DNA of 64,000 nucleotides from the IMG/VR virus record IMGVR_UViG_3300023174_000033, positions 1-64,000 of that record; one strand, 5' to 3'. The notes under the pieces were generated by a model. That model did not search any database. It worked only from the letters and a program-made list of their open reading frames with translations, and was not told the origin of the DNA. Shown one piece after another: positions 1 to 46,183 of this stretch. Position numbers and translations under genes: made by a program. Position 1 is the first letter of the stretch, and every line of letters begins with the position of its first letter.

Positions 1-213
1 GTCTGGTCCTTGGTCACCCTGGAAACCTTGTGGGCCATCTGGGCCTTGGTCGCCTTGGAAACCTTGTGGGCCATCTGGACCTTGGTCACCCTGGAAACCT
101 TGTGGGCCGTCAGGTCCTTGGTCACCCTGGAAACCTTGTGGGCCATCTGGGCCTTGGTCGCCTTGGAAACCTTGTGGGCCGTCAGGACCTTGGTCGCCTT
201 GTGGACCTGGTGA
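1..213. repeat. 36-bp coding tandem repeat ([12 protein letters not shown])n
   Basis: ccttggtcaccctggaaaccttgtgggccatctggg-like unit repeated about 5.5 times; variation is mostly synonymous in the minus-strand frame. Confidence 0.95.
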
Positions 214-5722: not shown

Positions 5723-6538
5723 ATGGATTCTGTAAAGGATTTTGTTTTAAATAAAATAGAAACTACTGATATAAATACTTATCCGTTCTATAATCTTTAT
5801 ATCCAAGATATTTTCCCAGATGATTTCTATAAAAGGTTAAAAGATAAAATGTTGTATTTTAAATACAACAAAAATTTACAAGATAGAAATTGGGATAACC
5901 CCAATTTTATCAATAAAAGGTTTCCACTCCATGATATTAATGATACGGAAATCAGCCAAGTCAGAGAAGTATTTGATGATGTGGACATCAAAAATGCCTT
6001 AATGAAGAAATTCTATTTCAATAGTTATCCAGATGAAATGGTTTTTAATCATGATATGCAATTTGTATTTACAGATGGAATGAGATTCCAAAGTATACAC
6101 ACAGATATACCAGCTCAATTTATATCTGTTAATTTCTATCTACCTGAGGATGAGCTTACAGAAGAGCAAGAGTTAGATAATGGAACTATTCTTTATGATA
6201 AAGAATTAAACCCTTGTAAAATAGTTAGATATAGGGGAAATAGTGTTTCTTTTTTTGCTCCTCATTTTTATAGTTATCATGGTTTTAATACAACTATAAA
6301 GAATAGAAATACTTTATTATTCTTTTATGCACAGAAAGACCTTATCAAAAGGTTTTATGATAATATTAAAAATCAAAATGGTGAACAGAATCCTGATAAG
6401 TTTAAAGATGTTATCCAATGGAAATTATCTAAATATAGATTAATTGAATATGGTTCAGATGATTTGGAATTTCTAACTAAATTAATTAAAGAAAAAGGAG
6501 ATTGTAAAGTAAATACATTAAATGGTAGGATAGAATAA
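5723..6538 (+). CDS. 2OG-Fe(II) oxygenase-like protein
   Basis: YPF…DIFPDDFY, HTD, GTILY, distal SYHG and R motifs. Confidence 0.7.
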   Translation: MDSVKDFVLNKIETTDINTYPFYNLYIQDIFPDDFYKRLKDKMLYFKYNKNLQDRNWDNPNFINKRFPLHDINDTEISQVREVFDDVDIKNALMKKFYFNSYPDEMVFNHDMQFVFTDGMRFQSIHTDIPAQFISVNFYLPEDELTEEQELDNGTILYDKELNPCKIVRYRGNSVSFFAPHFYSYHGFNTTIKNRNTLLFFYAQKDLIKRFYDNIKNQNGEQNPDKFKDVIQWKLSKYRLIEYGSDDLEFLTKLIKEKGDCKVNTLNGRIE

Positions 6539-6580
6539 AATATTTGGAATTCATCCAAACCTTTTTTATATTTGTATCTT

Positions 6581-6790
6581 ATGAAAGTAGTTTGTAATGC
6601 AAACACCACAATATTTAATTTTACTGAAGGTAAAATCTATGAAGTAATAACAGCACCTCACGATTATTTCTTTGCTAAATATATCATAGATGATAAGGGA
6701 TATAAAATTAAATATAGTGAATATACTGAATATATGTTCACGCCACTCGAATCAATAAGACAAGATAAGTTAAACCAATTAATAAAATGA
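6581..6790 (+). CDS. Small hypothetical protein (GKxYEV … IRQDKLNQL family)
   Basis: ATG at 6581 follows TATATTTG (6567-6574); paralogous to the next two ORFs. Confidence 0.65.
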   Translation: MKVVCNANTTIFNFTEGKIYEVITAPHDYFFAKYIIDDKGYKIKYSEYTEYMFTPLESIRQDKLNQLIK

Positions 6791-8996: not shown

Positions 8997-9221
8997 ATGA
9001 CATACCAAGAAGCTTACGACCTAGCACTTAAATCAAAATGGATTGCAACACCCTGCTTTGTAGGGGAATCCTGTTGGTGTAATATAATCACACCAGAAGT
9101 CCCAATCTTTTATGGCGAAGAAGATAACGAAGAAGTCCAAATAGTTTCATCAGGCGCCATTAATAAACAAATAGCAGAGCATATAGTAAAAGTCCATAAC
9201 CAATCCCTTGAATCAAAATGA
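8997..9221 (+). CDS. Hypothetical protein (CFxGExCWC motif)
   Basis: ORF after TATTTTTG box at 8985-8992. Confidence 0.7.
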   Translation: MTYQEAYDLALKSKWIATPCFVGESCWCNIITPEVPIFYGEEDNEEVQIVSSGAINKQIAEHIVKVHNQSLESK

Positions 9222-9457
9222 TGAATGAATATTATAAACCCCTAATAGTTTTCCTCATAGGTGGTATCATAGGAATTTCTATTCTCATTTTAAAAACACC
9301 CAGTAAAAAATACCCAGTGACAGTTCAATGTTATTGGGAAACAAAAGGTTATCAATCATATCCCACTTTTGAGTGTGATTCTATTAAAGGTGATACTTGT
9401 TATAAAGATGGTAATGTGATTATAACAAAGAATATTATTAACGTTAGTTTTAATTAA
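9218..9457 (+). CDS. Hypothetical membrane-anchored protein
   Basis: N-terminal hydrophobic helix. Confidence 0.6.
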   Translation: MMNEYYKPLIVFLIGGIIGISILILKTPSKKYPVTVQCYWETKGYQSYPTFECDSIKGDTCYKDGNVIITKNIINVSFN

Positions 9458-9494: not shown

Positions 9495-9662
9495 ATGAAT
9501 AACACAAAAGTTGAAAGAGCAATCTACCTACAAAAAAAGGCGAACGACCAAATAGATACTTATGGTGAAGCATCCCATGATGTTGTAGATGAACTAATGG
9601 AAATTGTAGATTCCTTAAATGAAGGGGAACAATCACTTATGTTAGAACTTTATTACAAATAA
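9495..9662 (+). CDS. 55-aa hypothetical protein; its TAA stop forms the first TAAC core of the array
   Basis: MNNTKVERAIYLQKKANDQIDTYG…LYYK*, after TACCTTTG at 9483-9490; below the ORF-track cutoff. Confidence 0.7.
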   Translation: MNNTKVERAIYLQKKANDQIDTYGEASHDVVDELMEIVDSLNEGEQSLMLELYYK

Positions 9663-9748
9663 CGGTTGGGTGTATATGTAGGTTTTTAAATAAATACTCT
9701 AATATATACTATTGAACTAAATGAAAAACTTACATATACACCTTGTTA
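9660..9748. repeat. attC-like site 1 (class A)
   Basis: TAAC-GGTTG-GGTGTATATGTAGGTTTT … AAAACTTACATATACACC-TT-GTTA. Confidence 0.85.
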
Positions 9749-9806
9749 TGTGTTAGTAAAAAAAATAAAAACTTATTATGAAACAAAAATTATACAAATT
9801 AAAAAT

Positions 9807-10019
9807 ATGAAAATTAAAGACTTAAAAGATTGGTTGGATACACTAACAAAAGAACACGATGAATGCGAAATTGTGTTTAGAAAAATTGTTGGTAAAGATA
9901 ATAAGGATTATATGATTGCGAAGGATAATAGCATTGATGCTTGTGGAATAGACACAGACAATAATGAGGTTTATTTTTGTGATGAAACGACACACAACAT
10001 TATTGAGAAAAACTCATAA
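9807..10019 (+). CDS. Cassette 1 ORF, hypothetical
   Basis: ATG at 9807 (MKIKDLKDWL…KNS) after the conserved cassette leader. Confidence 0.7.
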   Translation: MKIKDLKDWLDTLTKEHDECEIVFRKIVGKDNKDYMIAKDNSIDACGIDTDNNEVYFCDETTHNIIEKNS

Positions 10020-10037
10020 TTTTTGTTTTATTACTTA

Positions 10038-10085
10038 TAACGTCCGATGATAAACAATCGTTTTAATGTTGTTTATCATTTGTTA
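10038..10085. repeat. attC-like site 2 (class B, 48 bp)
   Basis: TAAC-GTCCG-ATGATAAACAA-TCGTTTTAATG-TTGTTTATCAT-TT-GTTA. Confidence 0.85.
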
Positions 10086-10119
10086 GGTTTAGTATCAAAA
10101 ATTTTATACAAATTAAAAT

Positions 10120-10443
10120 ATGAAAGCAAGAATTAACGAGAATGAAACAAAAGAACTGAATCCAACAGAGATTGGAGAAAGGTTCATCAATGTAATGAAT
10201 AAATTACAAGAATTAGGTGTTTTTTATGGTGAAAACTATGGTGGTAAATACGAAGAAAAATATCCACATAGTTGTTATATGTTTAATATTAGATTGGATA
10301 GACATCGTTCTGGTTTTGAAAGTTTAATTGAAGATGGGTGTGGTGATAACACAGAAGAAGTTGAAGTTGCAAGAGAAGATACATCAGTTGAAGAATTATT
10401 GGTTCTTTTGGAAAAGACTTTCGATAAACTAAAAAACTCATAA
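10120..10443 (+). CDS. Cassette 2 ORF, hypothetical
   Basis: ORF between complementary cassette ends; ends in KNS*. Confidence 0.7.
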   Translation: MKARINENETKELNPTEIGERFINVMNKLQELGVFYGENYGGKYEEKYPHSCYMFNIRLDRHRSGFESLIEDGCGDNTEEVEVAREDTSVEELLVLLEKTFDKLKNS

Positions 10444-10537
10444 AATTTTTGATATTGAATATAACTAGCGGCTACACGCAGGTTTATTGTGTATATACAA
10501 CAAATTAAAAAACTCAAAACAATAATTTAATTGAACC

Positions 10538-10650
10538 TAACGGTTGGGTGTATGAGAAGGTTTTTTATTTGGAAATCTCGAAATTTATACCTACCTTTGT
10601 ATGAGTAGTGTGGCTTTGCACATACTTTCAACTTACAGATAAACTTTATA
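10538..10650. repeat. Degenerate attC-like site (class A left arm, decayed right arm) with an internal promoter
   Basis: TAACGGTTGGGTGTATGAGAAGGTTT is identical to the left arm at 12504. Right arm AACTTACAGATAAACTTTATAAAC lacks GTT. TTTG (10568) and TACCTTTG (10592) lie inside. Confidence 0.65.
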
Positions 10651-10663
10651 AACAGTTTTTACT

Positions 10664-10879
10664 ATGGAAGAATTTACACAACATGATTGGAATCACATGC
10701 ACGATTGTATATTACATGCAACTTGGAATACCACGAAGAAGAAATCTACAAGAGAAGAACTTGTGGAAATTTTCAATAAACTACCAGAAGACTTAAAAGA
10801 AGATGCTTACGAATGGGGTATGTCAGATACGTTGTGGAGAGATAAGTTTATTGAATGGTATGAGGAAAATTGTTTATAA
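10664..10879 (+). CDS. Cassette 3 ORF, hypothetical
   Basis: Stop codon overlaps the TAAC core at 10877. Confidence 0.7.
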   Translation: MEEFTQHDWNHMHDCILHATWNTTKKKSTREELVEIFNKLPEDLKEDAYEWGMSDTLWRDKFIEWYEENCL

Positions 10880-10955
10880 CGGTCGCAAATATGAGAAGTA
10901 AATCTTTTCATTAAAAATTAGGCAAAGTAAGATTTATTTCTTATATTTGTTGTTA
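10877..10955. repeat. attC-like site (class C, 79 bp)
   Basis: TAAC-GGTCG-CAAATATGAGAAGTAAATCTT … AAGATTTATTTCTTATATTTG-TT-GTTA. Confidence 0.85.
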
Positions 10956-10985
10956 TAAGTAGTAAAAACTAAAAAAATTATACAA

Positions 10986-11201
10986 ATGGAACAAAAACTC
11001 GAATTAAATTACAAGGAACAAATTGATTTTCTAACTTCAAAAAGAGATATAGAGTTGGAAAAATTGGATAATATGTTAAAAAGTAATTCAGATAGATTAA
11101 AAATAGAAAATCAATTTGATACACTCATGAAAGAACAAAATCAACTATCACTTACAATAGGTGCTAATAGAGTTTTTGTTAATAGTAGATATGGTAAATA
11201 A
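10986..11201 (+). CDS. Cassette 4 ORF a, coiled-coil-like hypothetical
   Basis: ORF inside the cassette. Confidence 0.65.
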   Translation: MEQKLELNYKEQIDFLTSKRDIELEKLDNMLKSNSDRLKIENQFDTLMKEQNQLSLTIGANRVFVNSRYGK

Positions 11202-11218
11202 TTTTAAAAATTAAACAA

Positions 11219-11440
11219 ATGAAAAGAACTAAATTAACAGATTTTATTTTGAAAAACTTACGATGGACTAGTATATTTTTGTGGAATCAAATATATTTTA
11301 ACAGATTAAGTAAAGCGTTAGAAGAATTTAAAAACAATTCAGATGTGGAAACTATTTCACACAAAAATAATGATGTAATTAAAAGTTTTTCAAAAGAAAA
11401 TTTAGGTGATAGTACTATATATAAAGTTGAGGTAGTTTAA
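11219..11440 (+). CDS. Cassette 4 ORF b, hypothetical
   Basis: Second ORF in the same cassette. Confidence 0.6.
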   Translation: MKRTKLTDFILKNLRWTSIFLWNQIYFNRLSKALEEFKNNSDVETISHKNNDVIKSFSKENLGDSTIYKVEVV

Positions 11441-11459
11441 TTTTAGTTTTTATTACTTA

Positions 11460-11538
11460 TAACTGTTGCAAATATGAGAAGTAAATCTTTTCATTAAAAA
11501 ATAAACAAAATAAGATTTATTTCTTATATTTGTTGTTA
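11460..11538. repeat. attC-like site (class C, 79 bp)
   Basis: TAAC-TGTTG-CAAATATGAGAAGTAAATCTT … AAGATTTATTTCTTATATTTG-TT-GTTA; near-identical to 10877-10955. Confidence 0.85.
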
Positions 11539-11552
11539 TATTAGTTAAATTA

Positions 11553-11801
11553 TTGTTTTACAGATTAAAAAAGAAAAAAGTGAAAGAACAAATTATTGAA
11601 ATTTTAGGAAAAAACCACACCACTCCAATACAATTTGATGAATTTAATGGTTTTTATGGACTATATACATATAAAAATGGTGTATATGTGTTTAAGGAAG
11701 GTGAAGATATTGATTATGATGATATTAATGATAGTGATAAAAATAAAATATTAAAAGTGGTTTTGTCTAAAAAATGGAAATTAAATAAATCTCTACAATA
11801 A
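11553..11801 (+). CDS. Cassette 5 ORF, hypothetical
   Basis: ORF filling the cassette; start codon uncertain (TTG or a later GTG). Confidence 0.6.
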   Translation: MFYRLKKKKVKEQIIEILGKNHTTPIQFDEFNGFYGLYTYKNGVYVFKEGEDIDYDDINDSDKNKILKVVLSKKWKLNKSLQ

Positions 11802-11820
11802 ACAATAATTTAATTGAATA

Positions 11821-11868
11821 TAACGTCTGATGATAAACAATCGTTTTAATGTTGTTTATCATTTGTTA
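11821..11868. repeat. attC-like site (class B, 48 bp)
   Basis: TAAC-GTCTG-ATGATAAACAA-TCGTTTTAATG-TTGTTTATCAT-TT-GTTA; 1 nt different from 10038-10085. Confidence 0.85.
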
Positions 11869-11914
11869 TAAGTATGTAAAACAAAAATTATACAAATTAA
11901 AAAAAAATAAAATT

Positions 11915-12148
11915 ATGAGTTGGAAATTAAACACAGAAGATGAAAATCCATTATGGAGACAATATATGGATGAACTTGAAAAAATGAATCCAGAGGAATC
12001 AAGAAAATGGGAGGTAGTAAGAGAATTACCAGTTGAATTACCATTTAAGACAACAACGACATCCAATTATTCAGAAGATGAATTTTTGGAAAAATTGAAA
12101 ACTGATGAGGACTTTAATAAGAGATGGGGTAAATTAAAAAACTCATAA
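11915..12148 (+). CDS. Cassette 6 ORF, hypothetical
   Basis: ATG at 11915 (MSWKLNTEDE…KLKNS) after the conserved leader. Confidence 0.7.
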   Translation: MSWKLNTEDENPLWRQYMDELEKMNPEESRKWEVVRELPVELPFKTTTTSNYSEDEFLEKLKTDEDFNKRWGKLKNS

Positions 12149-12166
12149 TTTTTGTTTTATTACTTA

Positions 12167-12214
12167 TAACGATTGCAAATATATTGTCGTTTTAATGCAA
12201 TATATTTGTTGTTA
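12167..12214. repeat. attC-like site (class C-type stem with class B loop, 48 bp)
   Basis: TAAC-GATTG-CAAATATATTG-TCGTTTTAATG-CAATATATTTG-TT-GTTA. Confidence 0.85.
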
Positions 12215-12252
12215 TAGGTAGTTTATTAATTTTCTAAAACGGATTAAAAGAT

Positions 12253-12495
12253 ATGACACACGAATACATAAATGAATTATTAGAAAGACAGGGTGAAAAT
12301 CCTGTTTTGTTAGATAGATGTGTATTAAACATCACTGATGGTAGAAGTATAATTTACACACTTTGTGGTGATACTGATTATGAACAACGAGAACTTGAAA
12401 TATGCTATGCTGATAAACATAGTGATGTTATTTGGAAAGGTATCGTTAAAACAAAACAGGAATTGGAAAAGGTAGTTTTAGAAAATTTAAAATAA
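12253..12495 (+). CDS. Cassette 7 ORF, hypothetical
   Basis: ORF between complementary ends. Confidence 0.7.
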   Translation: MTHEYINELLERQGENPVLLDRCVLNITDGRSIIYTLCGDTDYEQRELEICYADKHSDVIWKGIVKTKQELEKVVLENLK

Positions 12496-12503
12496 ATTAC
12501 ATA

Positions 12504-12591
12504 TAACGGTTGGGTGTATGAGAAGGTTTGCTTTGATGAACTTTCAAATTATCACCAATGCTGATAGCAAACTTTCTTATACACCTTGTTA
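12504..12591. repeat. attC-like site (class A, 88 bp)
   Basis: TAAC-GGTTG-GGTGTATGAGAAGGTTTGCT … AGCAAACTTTCTTATACACC-TT-GTTA. Confidence 0.85.
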
Positions 12592-12702
12592 TAACCAGTA
12601 CGGTAAAATTGCACAAATGTTTGATTGAAATACTGAACAAAAACTTTTAAAAATGTGCGGTGGGAATTTTAAAATTGAATATTTATATATAAAGTAAAAA
12701 CT

Positions 12703-13200
12703 ATGAGTGAAGATATACGCAAAATGATTGATAAAGTTAAGAAATTTAAACAATTTATTAGCGAAAGTAATACTACAAATTATATCAATTGGAGTGATTT
12801 ACCAATCCAAGTAAAAAATGACATAACTGAAAATTTGAGAGATAATATACGATATATTAAAGAAGAATATTGGAATAGTGAAGCGTTGAGAGATTCTATT
12901 GACGATTCTATTAATAAACCAATTTTTAAAATAGAATATAAAAATGTTGATGTTTTGTATAACGAACTTATACAAATTGGTTGGGGTATTAGTGAAGACA
13001 ATGTTAAAAGATTAATTTCTGCTCTAAAAAATGGTGCTGAACTTGACCCAATTATACTTGAAAACGGTAAATTTTTTGATGGTGGTCATAGATTGACTGC
13101 ATACAAAAAAATGAAAAAAGAATTAATACCTACAATTGATATTGGATTTTTGATGAATTTCGATTGGGAAAAATGGGACAACGGACAGGCTGATTTTTAA
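12703..13200 (+). CDS. Cassette 8 ORF, ParB/Srx-like domain protein
   Basis: LDPIILENGKFFDGGHRLTAY motif. Confidence 0.7.
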   Translation: MSEDIRKMIDKVKKFKQFISESNTTNYINWSDLPIQVKNDITENLRDNIRYIKEEYWNSEALRDSIDDSINKPIFKIEYKNVDVLYNELIQIGWGISEDNVKRLISALKNGAELDPIILENGKFFDGGHRLTAYKKMKKELIPTIDIGFLMNFDWEKWDNGQADF

Positions 13201-13247
13201 AAGTTTTTGAAAAAAAATGCTAAATAGAACGTATAATGTAATATTGG

Positions 13248-13280
13248 TTATAACTAACATATATCTACAATAACCTGTTT
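13248..13280. other. Candidate attI-like primary site at the integrase-proximal end of the array
   Basis: The last cassette ends in TAAC (13251-13254), followed by non-palindromic TAACATATATCTACAATAAC about 50 bp before the integrase start. Confidence 0.45.
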
Positions 13281-13305
13281 TTCCACCTTTTAAACAAACT
13301 GGCAA

Positions 13306-13814
13306 GTGAAAAAAACCAACTATTACGAAATTTGTAAAACAAAACTGCAATACCTAAACTACTCACCCAAAACCCAATCTACCTATTTACACTATGTAGA
13401 GCAATTCCTAAACGCAACCAAAATACCACCTACAAGGCTTACCTCACAAGATTTTCAATCCTATCTTGATAACTTTAATTTCACCTCAACATCCCAACAA
13501 AATCAAGTAATAAATTCAATCCGATTTCTATATAAGTTTGGACTGAATAAGAAATATGATAAGGTTTCTTTCAAAAGACCTAAATCAGAAAAAAAACTAC
13601 CTAAAGTAGTTGATTCCGATTTTATACTCAATAAACTTGACCAAATAGGTAATATCAAACACAAAACTATACTAACACTAACCTTTTCTGTGGGTCTTAG
13701 AGTATCTGAAATAACTAACCTTAAAATTGAAGATATTGACTCTAAACGAATGATAATCCATATCAAAAATGCGAAAGGTAGAAAAGATAGAATAGTCCCA
13801 CTTTCACAAAAAGT
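13306..13814 (+). pseudogene. Tyrosine recombinase (integron-integrase/XerD-like), N-terminal part
   Basis: NYSPKTQSTY…F, QNQVINSIRFLY, KKLPKV, GLRVSE..NLKIEDID and KGRKDRIVPL motifs; breaks off at the GIY-YIG gene. Confidence 0.9.
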
Positions 13815-14600
13815 CTATTTCAAATTATAATCTTCTAAATATCTAAAATTAGTATTATTTTTTATTTGTCCTAAAAGTTTAGCTTTTAAGGTTCTTACCT
13901 TTATTCCCATTGAATCGGCTGCTTCCTTTTTACTCGGAAAAATTTCTCCAGTTTCAATGTTTATAATTGGTCTTTTATTATGAGCTACTTTTCCTTTATT
14001 CGATTCACTTATTTTTTTCTTTGTTTCACCTGAATGTTTTTTACCCGACATTGGTTTATGATGAGCATGATTTTTACTAATTTTTTTTCTTATATCATCT
14101 GTAAGTTTTACACCCTTTCTATTTGAATTGCCCTTAGTGAAATTATTACCTAATAACCAACCATTTTCTAAATATGATTCCAATTGATTTACACATACTA
14201 GAATACACTCATTATCTTTATAAATCCATTTTTTACCAAATTGTGGATTTTTTTCATTACTGAAATCAGCTCTATTCATTTTCATTAATAACTTAGTATA
14301 ATCAGACATTATATAACTATCACCACCCTCCCTCAAATTTAATCCAATGTCACTATTAAAGCTATTAAACTCTGCTATGTATTTTTTCTCTAAAAAATTT
14401 AATTCATCTCTTTCACATTCTACAAGAATAGAAAATTCATGATTTTCCCAACCATATTTTTTTATAGAATTATATAAAAAAGTTTGTTCTATGCATTTTT
14501 CCGATTTATATGATCTAATTCTTCTCTTTATATCAATTGATTGTCCTATATAAATTCTACCAGATGGAGAAACTATTTTATATATACCACATATTTTCAT
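13815..14600 (-). CDS. GIY-YIG homing endonuclease with NUMOD3-like repeats
   Basis: GIYKIVSPSGRIYIGQS…R…Y, LE..YI..FNS…GLNL..GG, GKKHSGETKKKIS and C-terminal IINIETGEIFPS..EAA motifs. Confidence 0.92.
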   Translation of the reverse strand: MKICGIYKIVSPSGRIYIGQSIDIKRRIRSYKSEKCIEQTFLYNSIKKYGWENHEFSILVECERDELNFLEKKYIAEFNSFNSDIGLNLREGGDSYIMSDYTKLLMKMNRADFSNEKNPQFGKKWIYKDNECILVCVNQLESYLENGWLLGNNFTKGNSNRKGVKLTDDIRKKISKNHAHHKPMSGKKHSGETKKKISESNKGKVAHNKRPIINIETGEIFPSKKEAADSMGIKVRTLKAKLLGQIKNNTNFRYLEDYNLK

Positions 14601-14633
14601 TAAAAACTAATTAATTTACATTATATATTAAAA

Positions 14634-14735
14634 ATGATAATCCAAAAAATAGCAGGTCACTCAAATGTTAAAACAACTGAAATATATACACACGTCTCAA
14701 ATCAATTACTAAGTAAAGTAAATCTACCCATATGA
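14634..14735 (+). pseudogene. C-terminal remnant of the tyrosine recombinase (catalytic Tyr box)
   Basis: Translates as MIIQKIAGHSNVKTTEIYTHVSNQLLSKVNLPI*, matching IQxLxGHxxxxTTxIYTH. Confidence 0.9.
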
Positions 14736-15076
14736 AAGTAATTATAGCAGGCTCAAGAAACTTTAATGACTACAACTTACTAAAATCAAGTTGTGATAAC
14801 CTACTTACACAATTCACTAATATAGAAATAGTTAGTGGAACCGCCAGAGGTGCAGATAAACTTGGTGAAAAATATGCAAGGGAGAAAGGTTATGATATAA
14901 AACAATTCCCAGCTAATTGGAATTTGGGTAAAAGTGCTGGATATATTAGAAATGATGAAATGGCACAGTATGCAGATATGTTAATTGCGTTCTGGGATGG
15001 AACAAGTAGAGGAACTAAACATATGATTGATTTGGCTAATAAAAGAAGTTTAAAGGTTGAAATTGTAAGATATTAA
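14732..15076 (+). CDS. SLOG/YspA-like (DUF2493) protein
   Basis: KVIIAGSR, IVSGTARGAD, AGYIRN..M and FWDG.SRGT motifs. Confidence 0.85.
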   Translation: MKVIIAGSRNFNDYNLLKSSCDNLLTQFTNIEIVSGTARGADKLGEKYAREKGYDIKQFPANWNLGKSAGYIRNDEMAQYADMLIAFWDGTSRGTKHMIDLANKRSLKVEIVRY

Positions 15077-15104
15077 AATAAATAAGTTTTTATATATATC
15101 ACAT

Positions 15105-15479
15105 ATGGAACACTTATGTGATTTTTTGGATTTTGTAGAACTTCTTGAAGAATCTAATGACCCAAAAGTAGGAACTGGTAAAAAACCTAAAGGTTCCAGT
15201 AGAAGACTTTACACAGATGAAAACCCGAATGATACAGTATCAGTTAAGTTCAGAACTAAAGAAGATGTTCAACAAACAATCAATAGCCAATCATTCAAAT
15301 CTAAATCACATAAAAGACAATCACAAATACTAAACCTTATTGAACAAAGGTTAAGAGTGGCTCATAAAAGAGCAAAAGATACAGATACAAAAGAAAGATT
15401 GAAAAGAGCTCACGATTATATAAAATCAAAATGTGAAGCATCTAAAAAGAAAACCCAAAGGTTAAAAGAAATTGGGTAA
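15105..15479 (+). CDS. Basic hypothetical phage protein
   Basis: ORF after a TATATA element; DPKVGTGKKPKGS.RRLYTDENP segment. Confidence 0.7.
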   Translation: MEHLCDFLDFVELLEESNDPKVGTGKKPKGSSRRLYTDENPNDTVSVKFRTKEDVQQTINSQSFKSKSHKRQSQILNLIEQRLRVAHKRAKDTDTKERLKRAHDYIKSKCEASKKKTQRLKEIG

Positions 15480-15561
15480 GTTTTATCGGGGTAAATAAAC
15501 AATTGTCTGAGCATAAAGTAAAATTACATAACCAATCCCTTGAATCAAAATAACTAATTAT

Positions 15562-16518
15562 ATGAAAATATTCACCGGTTCAAATAACAATCAATTAAGT
15601 CAAAAAATATCAAATAGCTTACAATCTATTTCAAATGGGTATTATACTGACTCATTCGATAGTCTTAAAATAGAGAAGTTTTCAGATGGTGAAATACTTC
15701 CACTCTTTACCGAATCTGTTAGAAATCAAGATGTTTATTTTATACAAAGTTTAGTAAGCAGTGATGCAATAATGGAAACCTTACTCGTATCAGATGCCGC
15801 TAAAAGAGCAGGTTGCTTATCTTTTAATCTAATATCACCTTATATGGGATACTCAAGACAAGATAAAACAGATCACCTAAGATCTTCTATTGGCTCTAAA
15901 GTTATCGCTGATATATTTGAAAAAATAGGAGTTAATAATTTATTCACTATCGACCTACACGCATCCTCTATTCAAGGATTCTATAACATACCAGTTATAC
16001 ATTTAAATGGTAATAAAATATTTATTGATTACTTAAAAGATCTAAACATTGATGATATTTGCATCGTAGCACCAGATCAAGGTGCGGTTAAAAGAGCCTC
16101 GGATTACTGTAAAGCTTTCCCAGATTCTACATTCGCAATGATTAATAAAAAAAGAACTAAACCAAATGAAGTTCATTCAATGGAGCTAGTTGGTGATGTT
16201 AAAGATAAAAACGTTGTTATCGTTGATGATATAGCAGATACCCTTGGAACTTTGAAAAAAGCATCAGAACTTGTTAAATCACACGGGGCCAAATCAGTTA
16301 GAGCAATTTGTACTCACGGAATCCTTTCCTCAAGTGCTATCAAAAATCTTGAAGAATCCCCTTTAATAGAATTATTGGTTTCAGATAGTATAGAATCTGT
16401 TATTGATAAAGCAACTTGGAGTAATAAGTTAAGAGTCGTAACTTGCGCTGATATCCTATCCAAAACAGTTATAGCAGTCCACCATAAGAAAAGTGTACAC
16501 GAAATAAACATAATCTAA
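15562..16518 (+). CDS. prs: Ribose-phosphate pyrophosphokinase
   Basis: FSDGEI, ESVR, YSRQDK, DLHA..IQGFY, PDQG, VDDIADT.GT and THG motifs. Confidence 0.95.
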   Translation: MKIFTGSNNNQLSQKISNSLQSISNGYYTDSFDSLKIEKFSDGEILPLFTESVRNQDVYFIQSLVSSDAIMETLLVSDAAKRAGCLSFNLISPYMGYSRQDKTDHLRSSIGSKVIADIFEKIGVNNLFTIDLHASSIQGFYNIPVIHLNGNKIFIDYLKDLNIDDICIVAPDQGAVKRASDYCKAFPDSTFAMINKKRTKPNEVHSMELVGDVKDKNVVIVDDIADTLGTLKKASELVKSHGAKSVRAICTHGILSSSAIKNLEESPLIELLVSDSIESVIDKATWSNKLRVVTCADILSKTVIAVHHKKSVHEINII

Positions 16519-24184: not shown

Positions 24185-26743
24185 TTAAGGTGGGCAAGTT
24201 CCCCATACTGGTTTTGGTAATGTCCATGCTGCCCCAGGTCCGGAGAATAATGATGGCACTGAAGGTATTAATGAAACACACCAGCCACTCAGATCTCTAT
24301 TGAATGCGCTTGCAAGAAAGAACATATTATCCATGTTTGTTACATTAGACGTATCCCAATTACCTATATTCTGATTGAAAATACTCGCACCCACAAACAT
24401 ACCATACATTGTAGTTACATTTGATGTGGTCCAAGAACCAATATTCTGATTGAAATTGGTTGCACTAGCAAACATATCACTCATACTTGTAACTTGTGAG
24501 GTGTTCCAAGAACTAATGTTACCATTAAATGATGGTGCCTGAGAGAACATTTCACTCATATCTGTAACTTGTGATGTGTTCCAACTATTAAGAGTATTAT
24601 TAAATGCGTTTGCACTATAGAACATACGACTCATGTTTGTAACAGACGAAGTATCCCATCCACTTATGTTTTGGTTGAATACATCAGCACCCTCGAACAT
24701 ACCACTCATATTTGTTACATTTGAAGTAGTCCAACTTCCAATATTTCTGTTGAACGATACTGCATTATTAAACATCCCACTCATATTATTTATGGTTGAT
24801 GTGTTCCAATTTCCGATATTCCCATTGAAACTTGAGGCGTTCCAAAACATGAGACTCAAATCAGTGACCTGACGAAGATTAGGGGCGTCCGTAGCTGAAT
24901 AAGTCATATTAACACAATCAGCAAAAGCCCCGTTAAGAGATCCTTTCCAATGATTGGTTCCCCATTGAACTATGTCAGTAACTTTGACCGCATCCGAGGA
25001 TCCAGCAAATTGTATTGATGGAAATACTTTAGTAATGCTGATACTAAATTTACTTCCAGTTGCAAAATTTATTGTATGATTTCCAGTGAGTCCTCTAACA
25101 GATCCCTTATTGCCTGATGTGATCAAATCCTGCCAAGTTACATTGTATCTGTATGAGTATCCGTATTGGTCGTAAGTCGGTATAGTGAAGTTTGAACCAC
25201 TACCTAGTGCAGTGTCAATATTGAAAATAAATGGACTTTGTGATGCTGAAAAGCCCCAATTTGGTTTTTGTAAGCCCCACGCTGAAGCTCCCGTTTTGAA
25301 ACCATCCGGTTCGGTCAACTTATTAGGAACCGACCATAAACTGAGATCTTGATTGAATGATGAAGCTCCATTGAACATACCATCCATATATGGTCCAGTA
25401 GCACCTTTTGAAACATCCCAGTATCCTATATCTTGATTGAATGAACTTGCACCGGAGAACATACCAAAAAAACTGGTACTTTTTGAAACTGTCCATCCGC
25501 TGATATCTTGATTGAATGATGGTGCATTGGAAAACATGCCAATCATGTTATTGGCTTGAGTTGTGTCCCAATTTGATATATCACCATTGAAAGCAATTGC
25601 TCCCGAGAACATATTTTGAAAGTTAAGGGTATTACTTGCAGTATATAAATTCCAAGTATTCAAATTTTGATTGAATGATTCTGCATTATAGAACATTCGG
25701 AAGAAACTTGAAACTTTTGTGACATTCCAAGCACTTATATCTTGGTTGAATGATATTGCTCCCTCAAACATAGCACTTACAGAAAAAACATTAGATACTG
25801 TCCAAGTTCCGATAGGCTGGTCAAATATAGAACATTCTTGGAACATATTGGCCAAAGTTACAGCACTTGTTAGATTCCAGTTACTGATATTTTGATTAAA
25901 CGATGAGCAACCATAGAACATTCCAGAAAATGTGTTAACATTACCAACATCCCAAGAACTCAAAGGTTGATCGAACGAGCTACATAAATAGAACATAAGT
26001 CCCATATTTTGTACAGAAGATACATTCCAAGAATTCAAAGGTTGATCAAACGAGCTACACAAATAGAACATTGATTGCATGGATGCAACATTTGAAACAA
26101 TCCAGCTAGAAATATCTTGATTAAACGGTATACATCCATAGAACATTTGTTCCATTAACGTTACACTTGAAACGTCCCAAGTTGTCACATCACCATTGAA
26201 TAAACTACATCCAGAAAACATACTAGTCATATCAGTGATCGTACTTGTGTCCCAACCACTCAAATCTGGATTTGTTATAGAACTACAATTTAAAAACGCT
26301 TCCACCATGCTAGTAACATTGGATAAATTTGGGTAATCTATAGCTGTAATTGTCATATTCAAACAACCAGAAAATGCACTGTTAAAACTTTCCCATACTA
26401 TATTGCCCCAATTTTCTATTCTAGTTAATTTTAGACAACTACCAGTATTTGCAAATTTTACAGATGGGTAGGTACCCGTAATTTTTATTCTCCATATACC
26501 TGGATTTGGTAAAATAAAATTAAGTCCACTATTTTGATTTGTATATAAACCATTATTTGATGGATTCCCAACCTCCTCATAGTATAGGTCAAAAAGATAT
26601 GTTAGTGTGTTATCATAAGGAATATCCAAACTTGGATTACCATCTCCCAAACTAGTATCAAATCGCATTACGAATTCTGGTCCAACATAAGGAGGTTCCT
26701 CTGAGGGACTAGAATCTATAATGCCGTGTAATAGTGAAATCAT
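24185..26743 (-). CDS. BspA/DUF285-repeat surface or fibre protein (two repeat blocks)
   Basis: Many ~25-aa FNQDISxWDVSxVTxMxxMF repeats. Confidence 0.92.
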   Translation of the reverse strand: MISLLHGIIDSSPSEEPPYVGPEFVMRFDTSLGDGNPSLDIPYDNTLTYLFDLYYEEVGNPSNNGLYTNQNSGLNFILPNPGIWRIKITGTYPSVKFANTGSCLKLTRIENWGNIVWESFNSAFSGCLNMTITAIDYPNLSNVTSMVEAFLNCSSITNPDLSGWDTSTITDMTSMFSGCSLFNGDVTTWDVSSVTLMEQMFYGCIPFNQDISSWIVSNVASMQSMFYLCSSFDQPLNSWNVSSVQNMGLMFYLCSSFDQPLSSWDVGNVNTFSGMFYGCSSFNQNISNWNLTSAVTLANMFQECSIFDQPIGTWTVSNVFSVSAMFEGAISFNQDISAWNVTKVSSFFRMFYNAESFNQNLNTWNLYTASNTLNFQNMFSGAIAFNGDISNWDTTQANNMIGMFSNAPSFNQDISGWTVSKSTSFFGMFSGASSFNQDIGYWDVSKGATGPYMDGMFNGASSFNQDLSLWSVPNKLTEPDGFKTGASAWGLQKPNWGFSASQSPFIFNIDTALGSGSNFTIPTYDQYGYSYRYNVTWQDLITSGNKGSVRGLTGNHTINFATGSKFSISITKVFPSIQFAGSSDAVKVTDIVQWGTNHWKGSLNGAFADCVNMTYSATDAPNLRQVTDLSLMFWNASSFNGNIGNWNTSTINNMSGMFNNAVSFNRNIGSWTTSNVTNMSGMFEGADVFNQNISGWDTSSVTNMSRMFYSANAFNNTLNSWNTSQVTDMSEMFSQAPSFNGNISSWNTSQVTSMSDMFASATNFNQNIGSWTTSNVTTMYGMFVGASIFNQNIGNWDTSNVTNMDNMFFLASAFNRDLSGWCVSLIPSVPSLFSGPGAAWTLPKPVWGTCPP

Positions 26744-31856: not shown

Positions 31857-32732
31857 ATGTCTCACTTCTTACAAACAGATTGGAATAAATTCCACCTTAT
31901 TGATTTAATTGAAGGTATGGAAAAAATCCAATCCGAATCAGTTGATATCATTATCATTGATCCACCCTATAATATCGGCAAAGACTTTGGAGAATGCAAA
32001 GATAATCTTTCTTTAGATGAATATCTCACTTGGTGTGATAAGTGGATTACTCAATCCATAAGAATCCTTAAACCAACCGGTTCAATATTCATCTATGGAT
32101 TCAGTGAAATATTAGCACATATATCAGTTAGACTTAAACTTGATAAAAGATGGTTGATTTGGCACTATACAAATAAAACAGTTCCAAGTTATAACGGTTG
32201 GCAAAGAAGCCACGAAAGCATAATCTATGCTTGGAAAACTAAACCACAATTCAATAGAGATGTGGTTAGAGTTCCTTATACAGATACATTCCTAAAAAAC
32301 GCAGCCGGTAAAAAAAGAAAAGGAAGCGAAACCGCTAGGTTCGGTAAAAGTAGTGATACAATCTATCAAGCCCACGAAGGAGGTGCACTACCCAGGGATG
32401 TATTCACCGATATATCAACTTTAGCCGGTGGTTCTGGTAGAGAAAGATACTTTCTTTATGATGGTGAGGTTTATCCAGGAAAAGATATAAGTAATTTTGA
32501 TGTAAGTAAGTGTTTGAAACATCCCACACAAAAACCAAGTAAACTAACCGAAAGATTAATCCTTTCCGCTAAACCCAATTCAAATTGCAAAGTAGTAATT
32601 CCTTTTGGTGGTTCCGGTACAGAAGGTGTCGTGTGTAAAAGACTTGGAGTTGATTTCATTGGGTTTGATATTAATCAAGATTATATCAAATTGGCTAATG
32701 GAGCTTTAGAAAAATATTTAGATATATTTTGA
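31857..32732 (+). CDS. Amino (N6A/N4C) DNA methyltransferase, beta class
   Basis: DPPY, then HPTQKP and PFGGSGT. Confidence 0.93.
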   Translation: MSHFLQTDWNKFHLIDLIEGMEKIQSESVDIIIIDPPYNIGKDFGECKDNLSLDEYLTWCDKWITQSIRILKPTGSIFIYGFSEILAHISVRLKLDKRWLIWHYTNKTVPSYNGWQRSHESIIYAWKTKPQFNRDVVRVPYTDTFLKNAAGKKRKGSETARFGKSSDTIYQAHEGGALPRDVFTDISTLAGGSGRERYFLYDGEVYPGKDISNFDVSKCLKHPTQKPSKLTERLILSAKPNSNCKVVIPFGGSGTEGVVCKRLGVDFIGFDINQDYIKLANGALEKYLDIF

Positions 32733-32740
32733 TTAAAAGA

Positions 32741-32770
32741 AAAAACCCAGTTTAAAGACTGGGTTTTTTT
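32741..32770. terminator. Bidirectional intrinsic terminator
   Basis: AAAAACCCAGT…ACTGGGTTTTTTT between convergent genes. Confidence 0.8.
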
Positions 32771-32774
32771 ATTA

Positions 32775-33410
32775 TTAGAACTTATTTCTAATATCTTTTT
32801 GAGGATTATAACTACCAATACCAGCAATATCATCATCAGAATTATATCCAAACATTTTCATAATCAAGTCAAACATAAAAAGTGCAGCCCAACCTGCAGC
32901 TGCAAGTTCAATTGTTGTCATTAAACTAACATCCACAGCTAGAGATGTATTCATGGGTAATTTACCTAAAACGTGTAATGCATATGTAAGTATGATAGCT
33001 AAACCCATACCAGCTGACCCAGCAACATTAATCCCTAGAGCTTGTTTTATCCTACCAATAATCTTAACAGCCATGTTTTCATTTTCTTTAAAGTTTTCTG
33101 AAATGGTCTCTAATCCAAGTGCTTTAGTTAATTTCATAACATTCTCCTTGTTCATTTCTGGATTAACAGTACCAAATGTTTTCTTCATAAACTGCGCAAT
33201 CTTTCCAGCATCTTTATCAGATATGCCCTTGAATGAATCTTTGACTTCTTCAATCTTATTTCCTATTTTATCCACAAGATCACTATATAAGTCAGATATA
33301 CCAGCAAAAACATCCTTATAAGCATCACCAGCATGTTTAACAACATCTACTGGTAACATACCCATTTCTACTTCTTCATTAAACTTATTAAAGTTTCGTA
33401 TGTGTTTCAT
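32775..33410 (-). CDS. Membrane protein; paralog of 18634-19236
   Basis: Shared KFNEEVEMGxLPxDVVKH, FGT, KEN and AVKI motifs. Confidence 0.7.
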   Translation of the reverse strand: MKHIRNFNKFNEEVEMGMLPVDVVKHAGDAYKDVFAGISDLYSDLVDKIGNKIEEVKDSFKGISDKDAGKIAQFMKKTFGTVNPEMNKENVMKLTKALGLETISENFKENENMAVKIIGRIKQALGINVAGSAGMGLAIILTYALHVLGKLPMNTSLAVDVSLMTTIELAAAGWAALFMFDLIMKMFGYNSDDDIAGIGSYNPQKDIRNKF

Positions 33411-46111: not shown

Positions 46112-46183
46112 GCATCCATAGTGAAATTGGTATCACGACGGTCTCCAAAACCGTTATTCTACGTTCGAATCGTAGTGGGTGTG
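46112..46183 (+). tRNA. tRNA-Trp (CCA); 3' CCA not encoded
   Basis: Acceptor GCATCCA/TGGGTGT, D stem GTGA/TCAC, anticodon arm ACGGT-CTCCAAA-ACCGT, T arm CTACG-TTCGAAT-CGTAG; followed by CAA. Confidence 0.93.

What the first reader, a model, noticed from the sequence alone, without database searches (positions are those of the whole stretch)
13306..14735. Integrase core replaced by an antisense GIY-YIG endonuclease
The recombinase stops after KGRKDRIVPLSQKV and resumes about 820 bp later as IIQKIAGHSNVKTTEIYTH. The segment between, which in tyrosine recombinases carries the catalytic HxxR, is absent. A minus-strand GIY-YIG/NUMOD3 gene fills the gap almost exactly and has its own AATATATA element. 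This is a replacement rather than an intron. The array is therefore frozen unless a recombinase acts in trans. The endonuclease might cut intact integrase alleles in co-infecting relatives and spread by homing.
Basis: partly seen in the sequence, partly recalled or inferred. Interest (0 to 1): 0.65.

Follow-up and report, generated by a model that had tools for sequence, protein, structure and literature searches.

The report
Homing endonuclease gene overwrites phage integrase
A selfish GIY-YIG homing-endonuclease gene has overwritten the catalytic core of the only tyrosine recombinase in a 465-kb lake-water phage, and its closest relatives sit at the same spot in the same gene of at least four other viruses, so this nuclease lineage spreads by targeting and killing that gene.

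Summary
Homology to intact integrase alleles stops at 13816 and resumes at 14637. An 820-bp segment replaces 195 bp (65 codons, including H216-x-x-R219). That segment is essentially one minus-strand I-TevI-like GIY-YIG/NUMOD3 gene with its own promoter-like AATATATA element.

76 of 80 related viral contigs carry an uninterrupted 266-aa integrase. All 64 distinct alleles keep R, K, HxxR, H and Y.

The five closest endonuclease lineages whose DNA could be read (60-92% identity) all lie antisense in an integrase of this family. The four with a readable right flank share the right junction at codon 235. Their left junctions differ: codon 230, 167/170, 158 or 138. So the original event was an insertion replacing 12 bp, and the larger deletions came later.

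The window's deletion-bearing cassette also sits in a phylogenetically distant integrase allele, with a co-conversion tract beside it (p = 5e-10). HEG-bearing alleles are scattered on the integrase tree.

This is intronless homing by a gene-destroying cassette, not an intron, a split gene or an assembly error. The integrase is dead, and the genome has no other tyrosine or serine recombinase. The adjacent attC-like hairpin array probably cannot be rearranged in cis.

Cleavage itself is untested.

The parts
9659..12593 (+). Context: array of eight attC-like hairpin sites (ATAAC-G-3-nt bulge-stem...stem-TGTTAT; 51, 82 or about 91 nt) separating small + strand ORFs
   Evidence: Repeat families; ssDNA folds of seven sites, the eighth at about 10537 seen only as a repeat copy; seven found by a simple detector against one elsewhere in the window. 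In 75 relatives there are 169 such sites upstream of the integrase on its strand against 6 downstream.
13306..13830 (+). Integrase N-terminal fragment (174 codons; homology to intact alleles covers codons 1-170, 13306-13815). It keeps R132 and K157. The start is GTG where relatives have ATG.
   Evidence: No change at any of 41 columns that are at least 97% invariant in intact alleles.
13817..14636 (.). 820-bp inserted cassette that replaces 195 bp (codons 171-235, including H216-x-x-R219) of the integrase
   Evidence: DNA alignment with five intact alleles; the missing segment is not found elsewhere in the genome; GC is 25.5% against 32.2% for the genome, in the lowest 1.6% of windows.
13815..14600 (-). 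Free-standing GIY-YIG homing endonuclease gene (261 aa). It has an I-TevI-like catalytic domain plus NUMOD3 and a helix-turn-helix DNA-binding region. Its stop codon (13815-13817) sits at the left junction.
   Evidence: Pfam and TIGR01453. AlphaFold model with pLDDT 84.8, whose best PDB matches are the I-TevI catalytic domain 1MK0/1LN0 (TM 0.75) and the I-TevI DNA-binding domain 1I3J. All six orthologues have open frames, with dN/dS 0.12-0.30.
14601..14636 (-). 36-nt endonuclease upstream spacer with the promoter-like element AATATATA (minus strand, 14629..14622). It ends in an ATG (14634-14636) that is in frame with the integrase C-fragment.
   Evidence: Sequence; the motif is 27-fold enriched upstream of ORFs genome-wide; the spacer is shared with L164.
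14637..14735 (+). Integrase C-terminal fragment (codons 235-266, IIQKIAGHSNVKTTEIYTH...). It keeps H242 and Y251 and is 100% identical in protein to L011. The first roughly 24 nt are the proposed retained half of the homing site.
12703..13200 (+). Context: 165-aa ORF between the last hairpin site and the integrase; no family match
14732..15076 (+). Context: SLOG/YAcAr (DUF2493-like) gene whose ATG overlaps the integrase stop codon (ATGA)

Best explanation
The 820-bp segment is a free-standing, I-TevI-like GIY-YIG homing-endonuclease cassette. Its home is one specific site, between codons 230 and 235, in the Xer-like tyrosine recombinase gene of an integron-like cassette platform carried by large freshwater phages.

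Inferred mechanism: during co-infection the enzyme recognises an intact allele. Its DNA-binding domain probably sits on the conserved sequence that encodes IIQKIAGH, and it cuts nearby, in sequence that the cassette has displaced. The break is resected and repaired from the cassette-bearing allele. This copies the endonuclease gene and some flanking integrase sequence into the recipient.

The cassette lies antisense and has no intron or intein, so every invasion inactivates the integrase. Pseudogene deletions then accumulated on the endonuclease's 3' side. They always stop at its stop codon, and they are passed on with the cassette. The version in this window lacks codons 171-235, so for this genome the event was a one-step replacement of the catalytic core.

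Consequences: the integrase cannot catalyse recombination because HxxR is absent and the Tyr-bearing piece is separated. The allele can no longer be cut. The adjacent hairpin array has no recombinase encoded in cis.

Shown here: the anatomy, the intact comparators, recurrence at the same site, lateral transfer with co-conversion, and purifying selection on the endonuclease. Inferred only: cleavage activity, the position of the recognition site, and the effect on the array.
For: 1. 76 of 80 related loci have an uninterrupted 266-aa integrase. All 64 distinct alleles keep R132, K157, H216, R219, H242 and Y251.

2. Five close endonuclease lineages could be examined at the DNA level: P0001 (92% identity), P0002, P0003, P0004 and P0006 (61-64%). 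All lie antisense inside an integrase of this family. In the four with a readable right flank, that flank starts at codon 235 (233 in L171's alignment). Left junctions are at codon 230 (L171, L172), 167/170 (L164-169, window), 158 (L170) and 138 (L084). More distant endonucleases (50% identity or less) are in other contexts.

3. On the integrase N-region tree the four HEG-bearing alleles need four separate changes. L084 is sister to intact L014/L015 (support 100/96) and L164 is sister to intact L020 (100/99).

4. The window and L164 share the endonuclease (92% aa, about 93% nt) and the same junction (CAA[A/T]AAGTC|TATTTC). Their distal integrase sequence belongs to different clades, and their flanks beyond the gene are unrelated.

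5. L164 is a mosaic. In the 330 nt far from the cassette, 46 informative sites match its intact sister and 13 match the window. In the 150 nt next to the cassette the counts are 1 and 22 (Fisher p = 5e-10).

6. L084 and L171 carry a diverged copy of the right flank between the endonuclease start and the real right flank. It matches the target consensus at 20 of 24 positions. This is a piece of a former host allele carried along.

7. All six endonuclease ORFs are open, with dN/dS 0.12-0.30, and the C-terminal DNA-binding part is the best conserved region.

8. The integrase fragments are not decayed: 0/41, 0/26, 1/41 and 1/35 changes at invariant columns. dN/dS to intact sisters is 0.05-0.07. 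Both fit recent invasions.

9. The fold and domain order match I-TevI.

10. The cassette's GC content is a low outlier.
Against: No cleavage assay, cross or time series exists, so activity and super-Mendelian spread are inferred from sequence alone.

Only about six HEG-bearing lineages are known. Two of them (L171, L172) are short contigs. L170 shows no recognisable C-fragment.

The insertion site is not the most conserved DNA stretch of the gene (1.3 bits per nt, against 1.5-1.6 at codons 138-160), so the classic 'targets the most conserved sequence' signature is weak.

The breakpoint for the mosaic test was chosen after looking at the data, although the gradient is monotonic.

Synonymous sites are saturated for the window's own fragment, so its time of disruption cannot be dated.

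The undecayed N-fragments could instead mean that the fragment keeps some function.

The metagenome scan added no further integrase-borne members.
Confidence: 0.8

Rival explanations
1. A single ancient insertion inherited vertically. The endonuclease is a resident relic or a domesticated gene that no longer moves, and the shared position only reflects common descent.
For: All cases with a readable right flank share the right junction, which one origin explains. The endonucleases are as much as 36-40% diverged, so the association is old. HEG-bearing alleles are rare, about 2 of roughly 95 viral contigs.
Against: HEG-bearing alleles nest, with strong support, beside intact alleles in four places on the integrase tree, and a deleted allele cannot revert. 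The window and L164 share a 92%-identical cassette and junction in distant integrase backgrounds, and L164 has a co-conversion tract. The fragments show no decay despite the old endonuclease divergence. Purifying selection on the endonuclease ORF fits continued activity.
Confidence: 0.08
2. The endonuclease mainly acts as a weapon in competition between phages (marker exclusion). It destroys co-infecting relatives at their intact integrase. The dead allele gives immunity, so the phage benefits and the element is not purely selfish.
For: The mechanics are the same as homing, and they are known for T4 Seg and Mob enzymes (PMC2988022). The cassette-bearing allele lacks sequence present in the target. 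Relatives that share this platform co-occur in freshwater samples.
Against: Nothing in the sequence separates a benefit to the phage from benefit to the element alone. One cut in a 465-kb genome with active recombination is more likely to be repaired than to be lethal. HEG-bearing alleles are rare.
Confidence: 0.1
3. An intron, or a split but still functional integrase. Either the endonuclease sits in a self-splicing intron, or the two fragments reassemble into an active enzyme, as in the HEG-split nrdA of phage Aeh1.
For: TIGR01453 is named 'group I intron endonuclease'. The cassette supplies an in-frame ATG for the C-fragment. HEG-split genes that stay functional are known (PMC2988022).
Against: Rfam finds no group I or II intron even at E = 10. 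Compared with 64 intact alleles, 65 codons including the invariant H216 and R219 are missing, and they are not encoded elsewhere in the genome. The endonuclease is antisense, and the two fragments are in different frames.
Confidence: 0.01
4. An assembly chimera that joined an endonuclease contig to a broken integrase.
For: The record is a metagenome assembly. Runs from other studies give only short unitigs whose overlap across each junction is under 31 nt.
Against: A second assembler's 15.9-kb contig from the probable source run is identical across both junctions at depth 51. Contigs from several other samples (NCBI and Logan assemblies) carry the same cassette with the same junction. Four further lineages have the same architecture.
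Confidence: 0.01

Closest known systems
Free-standing GIY-YIG Seg endonucleases of T4 (SegF, SegG and others) and 'intronless homing' with localized marker exclusion
   Same: A free-standing GIY-YIG gene with its own promoter and no intron or intein. It appears to spread by double-strand-break repair with co-conversion of flanking host sequence. An antisense orientation is known for segD (PMC2988022).
   Different: Seg genes sit between genes, and the repair swaps one functional allele for another. This cassette sits inside a gene and destroys it. Versions carrying different deletions of the target gene circulate. The target, a tyrosine recombinase gene, is one I did not find reported for any HEG.
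I-TevI (td intron endonuclease of T4)
   Same: It is the best structural match for both the catalytic and the DNA-binding domains, with the same domain order, and TIGR01453 is matched above its cut-off. A homing-site-like sequence lies just upstream of the endonuclease promoter, which recalls the I-TevI operator used for autorepression (PMC2988022).
   Different: The gene is not inside an intron. Only 28-30% identity in the catalytic domain. Operator function, cleavage distance and a CNNNG-type cleavage motif were not tested here.
HEG-split genes (mobE in nrdA of Aeromonas phage Aeh1, mobA in T4 gene 60, seg in gene 43 of phage 25)
   Same: A free-standing endonuclease gene inserted within a coding sequence, in a functionally critical region, leaving two ORFs (PMC2988022).
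   Different: Those insertions lose no coding sequence and the two polypeptides reassemble into an active enzyme. Here 4 to 96 codons are lost, depending on the lineage, and in this window the catalytic HxxR is gone.
Integrons, and CALINs (clusters of attC sites lacking an integron integrase), including those reported in phages (PMC9892861)
   Same: An array of small cassettes separated by imperfect hairpins with complementary ATAAC / GTTAT ends and a one-sided bulge, next to a tyrosine recombinase. With the recombinase dead, the locus is functionally a CALIN.
   Different: The recombinase is a 266-aa Xer/XerA-like protein without the IntI-specific extra domain, and it scores below the IntI cut-off. 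It lies at the 3' end of the array on the same strand. No recombination has been demonstrated.

Membership tests
GIY-YIG homing endonucleases (I-TevI / Seg type) | GIY-YIG catalytic domain with the GIY...YIG motif and conserved Arg, Glu and Asn | tested here: met
   Pfam PF01541 (29.6 bits, cut-off 22.6) and TIGR01453 (83.3 bits, cut-off 56). G5, Y7, Y17, G19, E71 and N88 are invariant and R27 nearly so across 48 homologues. The fold matches 1MK0/1LN0 with TM 0.75.
GIY-YIG homing endonucleases (I-TevI / Seg type) | Separate C-terminal DNA-binding module (NUMOD3 / helix-turn-helix) joined by a linker | tested here: met
   NUMOD3 at 23.4 bits (cut-off 20.4); NUMOD1 weak. The model's C-terminal part matches the I-TevI DNA-binding domain 1I3J (probability 0.99, E = 0.011, TM only 0.38). 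This is the most conserved part among the six orthologues.
GIY-YIG homing endonucleases (I-TevI / Seg type) | Occupies the same site in otherwise HEG-less homologous alleles, with signs of lateral transfer and co-conversion | tested here: met
   Same right junction in the four of five other lineages where the flank is readable. 76 of 80 relatives lack the endonuclease. Scattered on the integrase tree. Mosaic flank with p = 5e-10.
GIY-YIG homing endonucleases (I-TevI / Seg type) | Site-specific cleavage of the HEG-less allele and super-Mendelian inheritance in mixed infection | not testable with these tools
   Needs enzyme assays and phage crosses; no isolate exists.
Group I intron-encoded endonuclease | The ORF lies inside a group I ribozyme that splices out of the host transcript | tested here: not met
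   No intron family in Rfam at gathering score or at E up to 10 over 13200-14900. The ORF is antisense to the host gene. 195 bp of coding sequence is missing.
Active tyrosine recombinase | Complete catalytic set R-K-H-x-x-R-H/W-Y in one polypeptide | tested here: not met
   R132 and K157 are in the N-fragment and H242 and Y251 in the C-fragment. H216 and R219 are absent from the locus and the genome.
Integron integrase (IntI) | IntI-specific additional domain between the Lys hairpin and HxxR; a score above the TIGR02249 / NF011946 cut-offs | tested here: not met
   Intact relatives score 146-158 bits against a cut-off of 265, in two stretches that skip the middle of the model. The best model is XerA-like NF040815, at 179-190 bits against a cut-off of 220. 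In the window itself this region is deleted.
Integron / CALIN cassette array | Repeated attC-type sites: imperfect palindromes with conserved complementary ends, unpaired bases on one arm and a variable centre, one after each cassette | tested here: met
   Eight sites at 9659-12593: seven folded and detected, plus one at about 10537 seen only as a repeat copy. The strand-specific link to the integrase holds across 75 relatives. Not scored with HattCI or IntegronFinder, which were not available.
Integron / CALIN cassette array | Integrase-mediated excision and insertion of cassettes at these sites | not testable with these tools
   Needs a recombination assay using an intact allele.

The most novel reading that the evidence does not exclude
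This endonuclease lineage acts as a natural knock-out gene drive aimed at the recombinase of a phage-borne, integron-like cassette platform. Cassette variants that have trimmed away the poorly conserved middle of the integrase would be favoured. Trimming brings the endonuclease next to the most conserved DNA of the gene (codons 138-170 on one side, 235-250 on the other), so the cassette has good homology arms in a wider range of diverged alleles. The retained right half-site, or a carried-along copy of it, would double as an I-TevI-style operator for autorepression. If true, selfish nucleases would control whether large phages can still shuffle their accessory cassettes.
Probability: 0.25. Interest if true: 0.75.

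Novelty: new variant of a known kind. Interest (0 to 1): 0.6.

Why it matters
Homing endonucleases are usually thought to persist because they do little harm. They hide in introns or inteins, or they sit between genes. Here a well-supported lineage lives by destroying its target gene, and it carries different deletions of that gene from genome to genome.

The target is also of interest. It is the only recombinase of an integron-like hairpin and cassette array that is conserved in many large freshwater phages. So a selfish element decides whether that diversity-generating platform remains active.

The system offers a testable natural example of a suppression-type gene drive in viruses. It also offers a new I-TevI-like enzyme with a predicted target region of roughly 24-40 bp (inferred, not mapped). 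Finally, it gives a marker, HEG-bearing versus intact alleles, for tracking co-infection and recombination among uncultured huge phages.

Tried and rejected
- Rfam at gathering score over the window and at E up to 10 over 13200-14900 found no intron or ribozyme.
- phmmer of the endonuclease against PDB sequences found nothing at E up to 0.01. The fold search was needed to link it to I-TevI.
- blastn of the locus against cultured phages matched only the SLOG gene. tblastn of the N-fragment reached only 34-39% identity, to integrases of Cellulophaga and Polaribacter phages.
- dN/dS for the window's N-fragment is uninformative because synonymous sites are saturated.
- The idea that the insertion site is the most conserved DNA of the gene was not borne out.
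- The metagenome-contig scan with the six-endonuclease alignment returned only the window's own contig, the P0001 group and distant endonucleases.
- The context of P0005 could not be read: first a server error, then no DNA held.
- Searches for an NCLDV capsid and for Terminase_6C in the genome were negative. The 'phage' call rests on tail-fibre-like and methyltransferase PHROG hits and on the relatives, not on a capsid or terminase hit.
- The RNA run X20 holds only short related contigs and says nothing about transcription.
- Runs from other studies do not bridge either junction by 31 nt or more, so independent support for the junctions comes from other assemblies of related cassettes, not from those runs.
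Full report
**What is in the window**

The window is the first 64 kb of a 464,605-bp virus record that is estimated to be 98% complete. The record comes from lake water. It has tail-fibre-like and DNA-methyltransferase PHROG hits and no NCLDV capsid hit. Its relatives are IMG/VR viral contigs of up to 362 kb. I treat it as a very large phage.

At the flagged place there are three ORFs:
- 13306..13830 (+), 174 aa: Phage_int_SAM_4 plus Phage_integrase profile positions 19-75.
- 13815..14600 (-), 261 aa: GIY-YIG, NUMOD3 and a weak NUMOD1 hit. It matches TIGR01453 above its cut-off.
- 14634..14735 (+), 33 aa: Phage_integrase profile positions 149-170.

The two integrase pieces are the only tyrosine-recombinase matches in the whole genome. 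There is no serine recombinase either.

**Defining the lesion**

A scan of IMG/VR with the N-fragment returned 80 loci at 49-79% protein identity. In 76 of them a single open frame of about 266 aa runs through both parts. The C-part begins 192 nt after the N-part ends.

Alignment of the window with five intact alleles shows homology ending at 13816 and resuming at 14637. So 820 bp stand where relatives have 195 bp, which is codons 171-235 in L011 numbering.

All 64 distinct intact alleles keep R132, K157, H216, R219, H242 and Y251. The window lacks H216 and R219. tblastn with intact proteins finds the missing part nowhere in the 465 kb.

Rfam finds no intron, and the two fragments are in different frames. 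The integrase in this genome is therefore catalytically dead. Splicing or reassembly of fragments cannot rescue it.

**The arrangement is real**

A Logan contig of 15,918 nt from the probable source run matches 12600-15600 without any difference, at depth 51. Two runs from other studies hold identical unitigs of the N-fragment, the endonuclease gene and the right flank. However, none of those bridges a junction by 31 nt or more. No joint that skips the cassette was seen. Stronger independent support comes from other assemblies described below.

**The inserted gene**

The ORF has the GIY...YIG motif, and its catalytic residues are invariant or nearly so across 48 homologues. An AlphaFold model has a mean pLDDT of 84.8. 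Its best PDB matches are the I-TevI catalytic domain (1MK0/1LN0, TM 0.75, 28-30% identity), followed by the I-TevI DNA-binding domain 1I3J.

It lies 22-29 nt upstream of the ATG. The same 8-mer occurs upstream of 104 of 409 ORFs in this genome (3.8 expected), typically at -24.

The gene's GC content (25.5%) is in the lowest 1.6% of same-size windows of the genome. The closest copy of this particular gene in the genome is itself. A second, unrelated GIY-YIG/NUMOD3 ORF lies near 203 kb.

**The key comparative result**

The closest relatives of the endonuclease are P0001 (92%) and P0002 to P0006 (60-64%). Five of these six lineages could be read at the DNA level. In each, the gene lies antisense inside an integrase of this same family. 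In the four with a readable right flank, that flank begins at codon 235.

The left junction varies:

| Lineage | Left junction |
|---|---|
| L171, L172 | codon 230 (after ...LLE.G); only 12 bp (T-D-L-R) replaced, and HxxR still present in L172's 243-aa open frame |
| P0001 group (L164-L169) and the window | codon 167/170; same junction sequence, CAA[A/T]AAGTC\|TATTTC |
| L170 | codon 158 (no C-fragment recognised) |
| L084 | codon 138 |

L171 additionally lacks codons 48-199.

Every left junction abuts the endonuclease stop codon. L084 groups with L171 and L172 in endonuclease identity (71-75%), so its larger deletion is derived.

The simplest history is one insertion site followed by independent deletions of the now useless integrase DNA. 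Each deletion is limited by selection to keep the endonuclease ORF.

More distant endonucleases (50% identity or less) are in other contexts. One 232-aa clade sits, in sense orientation, just after a truncated integrase of a different family.

**Evidence that the cassette moves**

1. On a maximum-likelihood tree of the integrase N-region (86 rows), the four HEG-bearing alleles need four separate changes. L084 is sister to intact L014/L015 and L164 is sister to intact L020, both with starred support. A deleted allele cannot revert, so these are separate invasions.

2. The window and L164 share a 92%-identical endonuclease and the same deletion junction. Their distal integrase sequences lie in different clades, and the DNA beyond the gene is unrelated.

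3. L164's N-fragment is a mosaic. Far from the cassette it is 88-97% identical to L020. Next to the cassette it resembles the window/L011 clade. Informative sites are 46:13 in the distal 330 nt and 1:22 in the proximal 150 nt (Fisher p = 5e-10). The breakpoint was chosen after inspection, but the gradient is monotonic. This is what a co-conversion tract looks like.

4. L084 and L171 carry a diverged copy of the right flank (R-I-I-Q-K-V-G-G-H) between the endonuclease start and the true right flank. It matches the target consensus at 20 of 24 positions. It is a piece of a former host allele carried along in an imprecise event.

5. The six endonuclease ORFs are all open, with dN/dS of 0.12-0.30.

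6. The integrase fragments beside them are not decayed. Changes at columns that are at least 97% invariant are 0/41 in the window, 0/26 in L084, 1/41 in L164 and 1/35 in L170. Only L172 shows decay, at 11/51. dN/dS to intact sister alleles is 0.05-0.07. Old endonuclease divergence next to fresh host fragments fits repeated invasion of intact alleles.

**Mechanism proposed**

This is intronless homing, as described for the T4 Seg enzymes (PMC2988022). The enzyme cuts an intact allele in a co-infecting relative. The break is resected and repaired from the cassette-bearing allele.

All lineages with a readable right flank keep it immediately upstream of the endonuclease promoter, while the sequence to the left is displaced. 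I therefore infer that the DNA-binding domain recognises the start of the C-fragment, and that the cut falls in the displaced part. That would make cassette-bearing alleles immune. It could also let the retained half-site act as an operator, as in I-TevI (PMC2988022). These last points are inference only.

**Context**

Upstream of the integrase, at 9659-12593, lie eight hairpin sites. Each has complementary ATAAC / GTTAT ends, a 3-nt bulge on the 5' arm only, and a variable centre. Seven were folded; the eighth was seen only as a repeat copy. Each follows a small + strand ORF.

In 75 distinct relatives, a simple detector finds 169 such sites upstream of the integrase on its strand (0.58 per kb). 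It finds 6 downstream and 10 on the other strand. The platform is integron-like.

Its recombinase, however, is a short Xer/XerA-like protein that fails the IntI models, and it sits at the 3' end of the array. Integrons and integrase-less attC clusters have been reported in phages (PMC9892861). I found no paper describing this platform or an endonuclease that targets an integrase gene.

'The array is frozen' is a fair inference for this genome in single infection, but it is untested.

**Verdict**

The element belongs to a known kind, the free-standing GIY-YIG homing endonucleases. It differs in being gene-destroying, antisense and intragenic, and in its new target. I found no sequence of concern, and no step needed referral.

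Noticed in passing
window 9659-12593 (+), and loci L004-L081 upstream of their integrases: There is an integron-like array of attC-like hairpins (ATAAC...GTTAT ends, one-sided 3-nt bulge; 51, 82 or 91 nt). Across 75 relatives such sites lie almost only upstream of the 266-aa Xer-like integrase, on its strand (169 against 6 downstream). The integrase is not an IntI by the NCBIfam models.
   Followed up: partly
window 9162-9226 and 15494-15558: A 65-nt direct repeat (85% identical), each copy ending at an ATG, brackets a 6.3-kb block holding the array, integrase, endonuclease, SLOG gene and a 124-aa ORF. It could be a duplicated promoter and leader, or the edges of an inserted island.
   Followed up: no
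L084 3915-3988 and L171 718-786 (between the endonuclease start and the integrase C-fragment): A diverged duplicate of the target's right flank (ATTATTCAAAAAGT[A/T]GGTGGACA; 20 of 24 matches to the consensus) sits just upstream of the endonuclease. It is a footprint of an earlier host allele and may act as an I-TevI-like operator.
   Followed up: partly
L175 1-1140 and L176 380-1558: A related 232-aa endonuclease clade (P0007, 52% identical) lies in sense orientation directly after a truncated integrase of a different family (28% identical). That integrase ends just past GLRVSEVV, the same motif where L084's fragment ends.
   Followed up: partly
L078/L079 about 6370-6400; L076 about 6000-6680: Three relatives have integrases broken without any endonuclease. 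L078 and L079 have a +1 frameshift in the GLRVSE codons. L076 is truncated after HxxRHS. This suggests the gene is dispensable, although the frameshift could be an assembly error.
   Followed up: no
G000:C1 about 202,950-203,700 (+), outside the window: A second, unrelated free-standing GIY-YIG/NUMOD3 endonuclease ORF (open frame of about 298 aa) lies in the same genome.
   Followed up: no
window 13306; 14732-14735: The integrase N-fragment starts with GTG where relatives have ATG. The C-fragment's stop codon overlaps the start of the downstream SLOG/YAcAr gene (ATGA), and the cassette supplies an in-frame ATG at 14634.
   Followed up: no
whole genome; for example window 12684-12695 and 15088-15097: AATATATA / TAATATATAA is a genome-wide upstream element. 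It occurs upstream of 104 of 409 ORFs (27-fold enrichment) at a median position of -24, and is presumably a phage promoter.
   Followed up: partly
window 1-208; 24185-26743; 32727-32792; 46112-46183: Other features seen: a collagen-like 18/36/108-nt tandem repeat at the contig end; an 852-aa DUF285 repeat protein; a borderline Rfam Yfr10 hit (45.9 bits against a gathering score of 43) that is probably spurious; and one tRNA.
   Followed up: no
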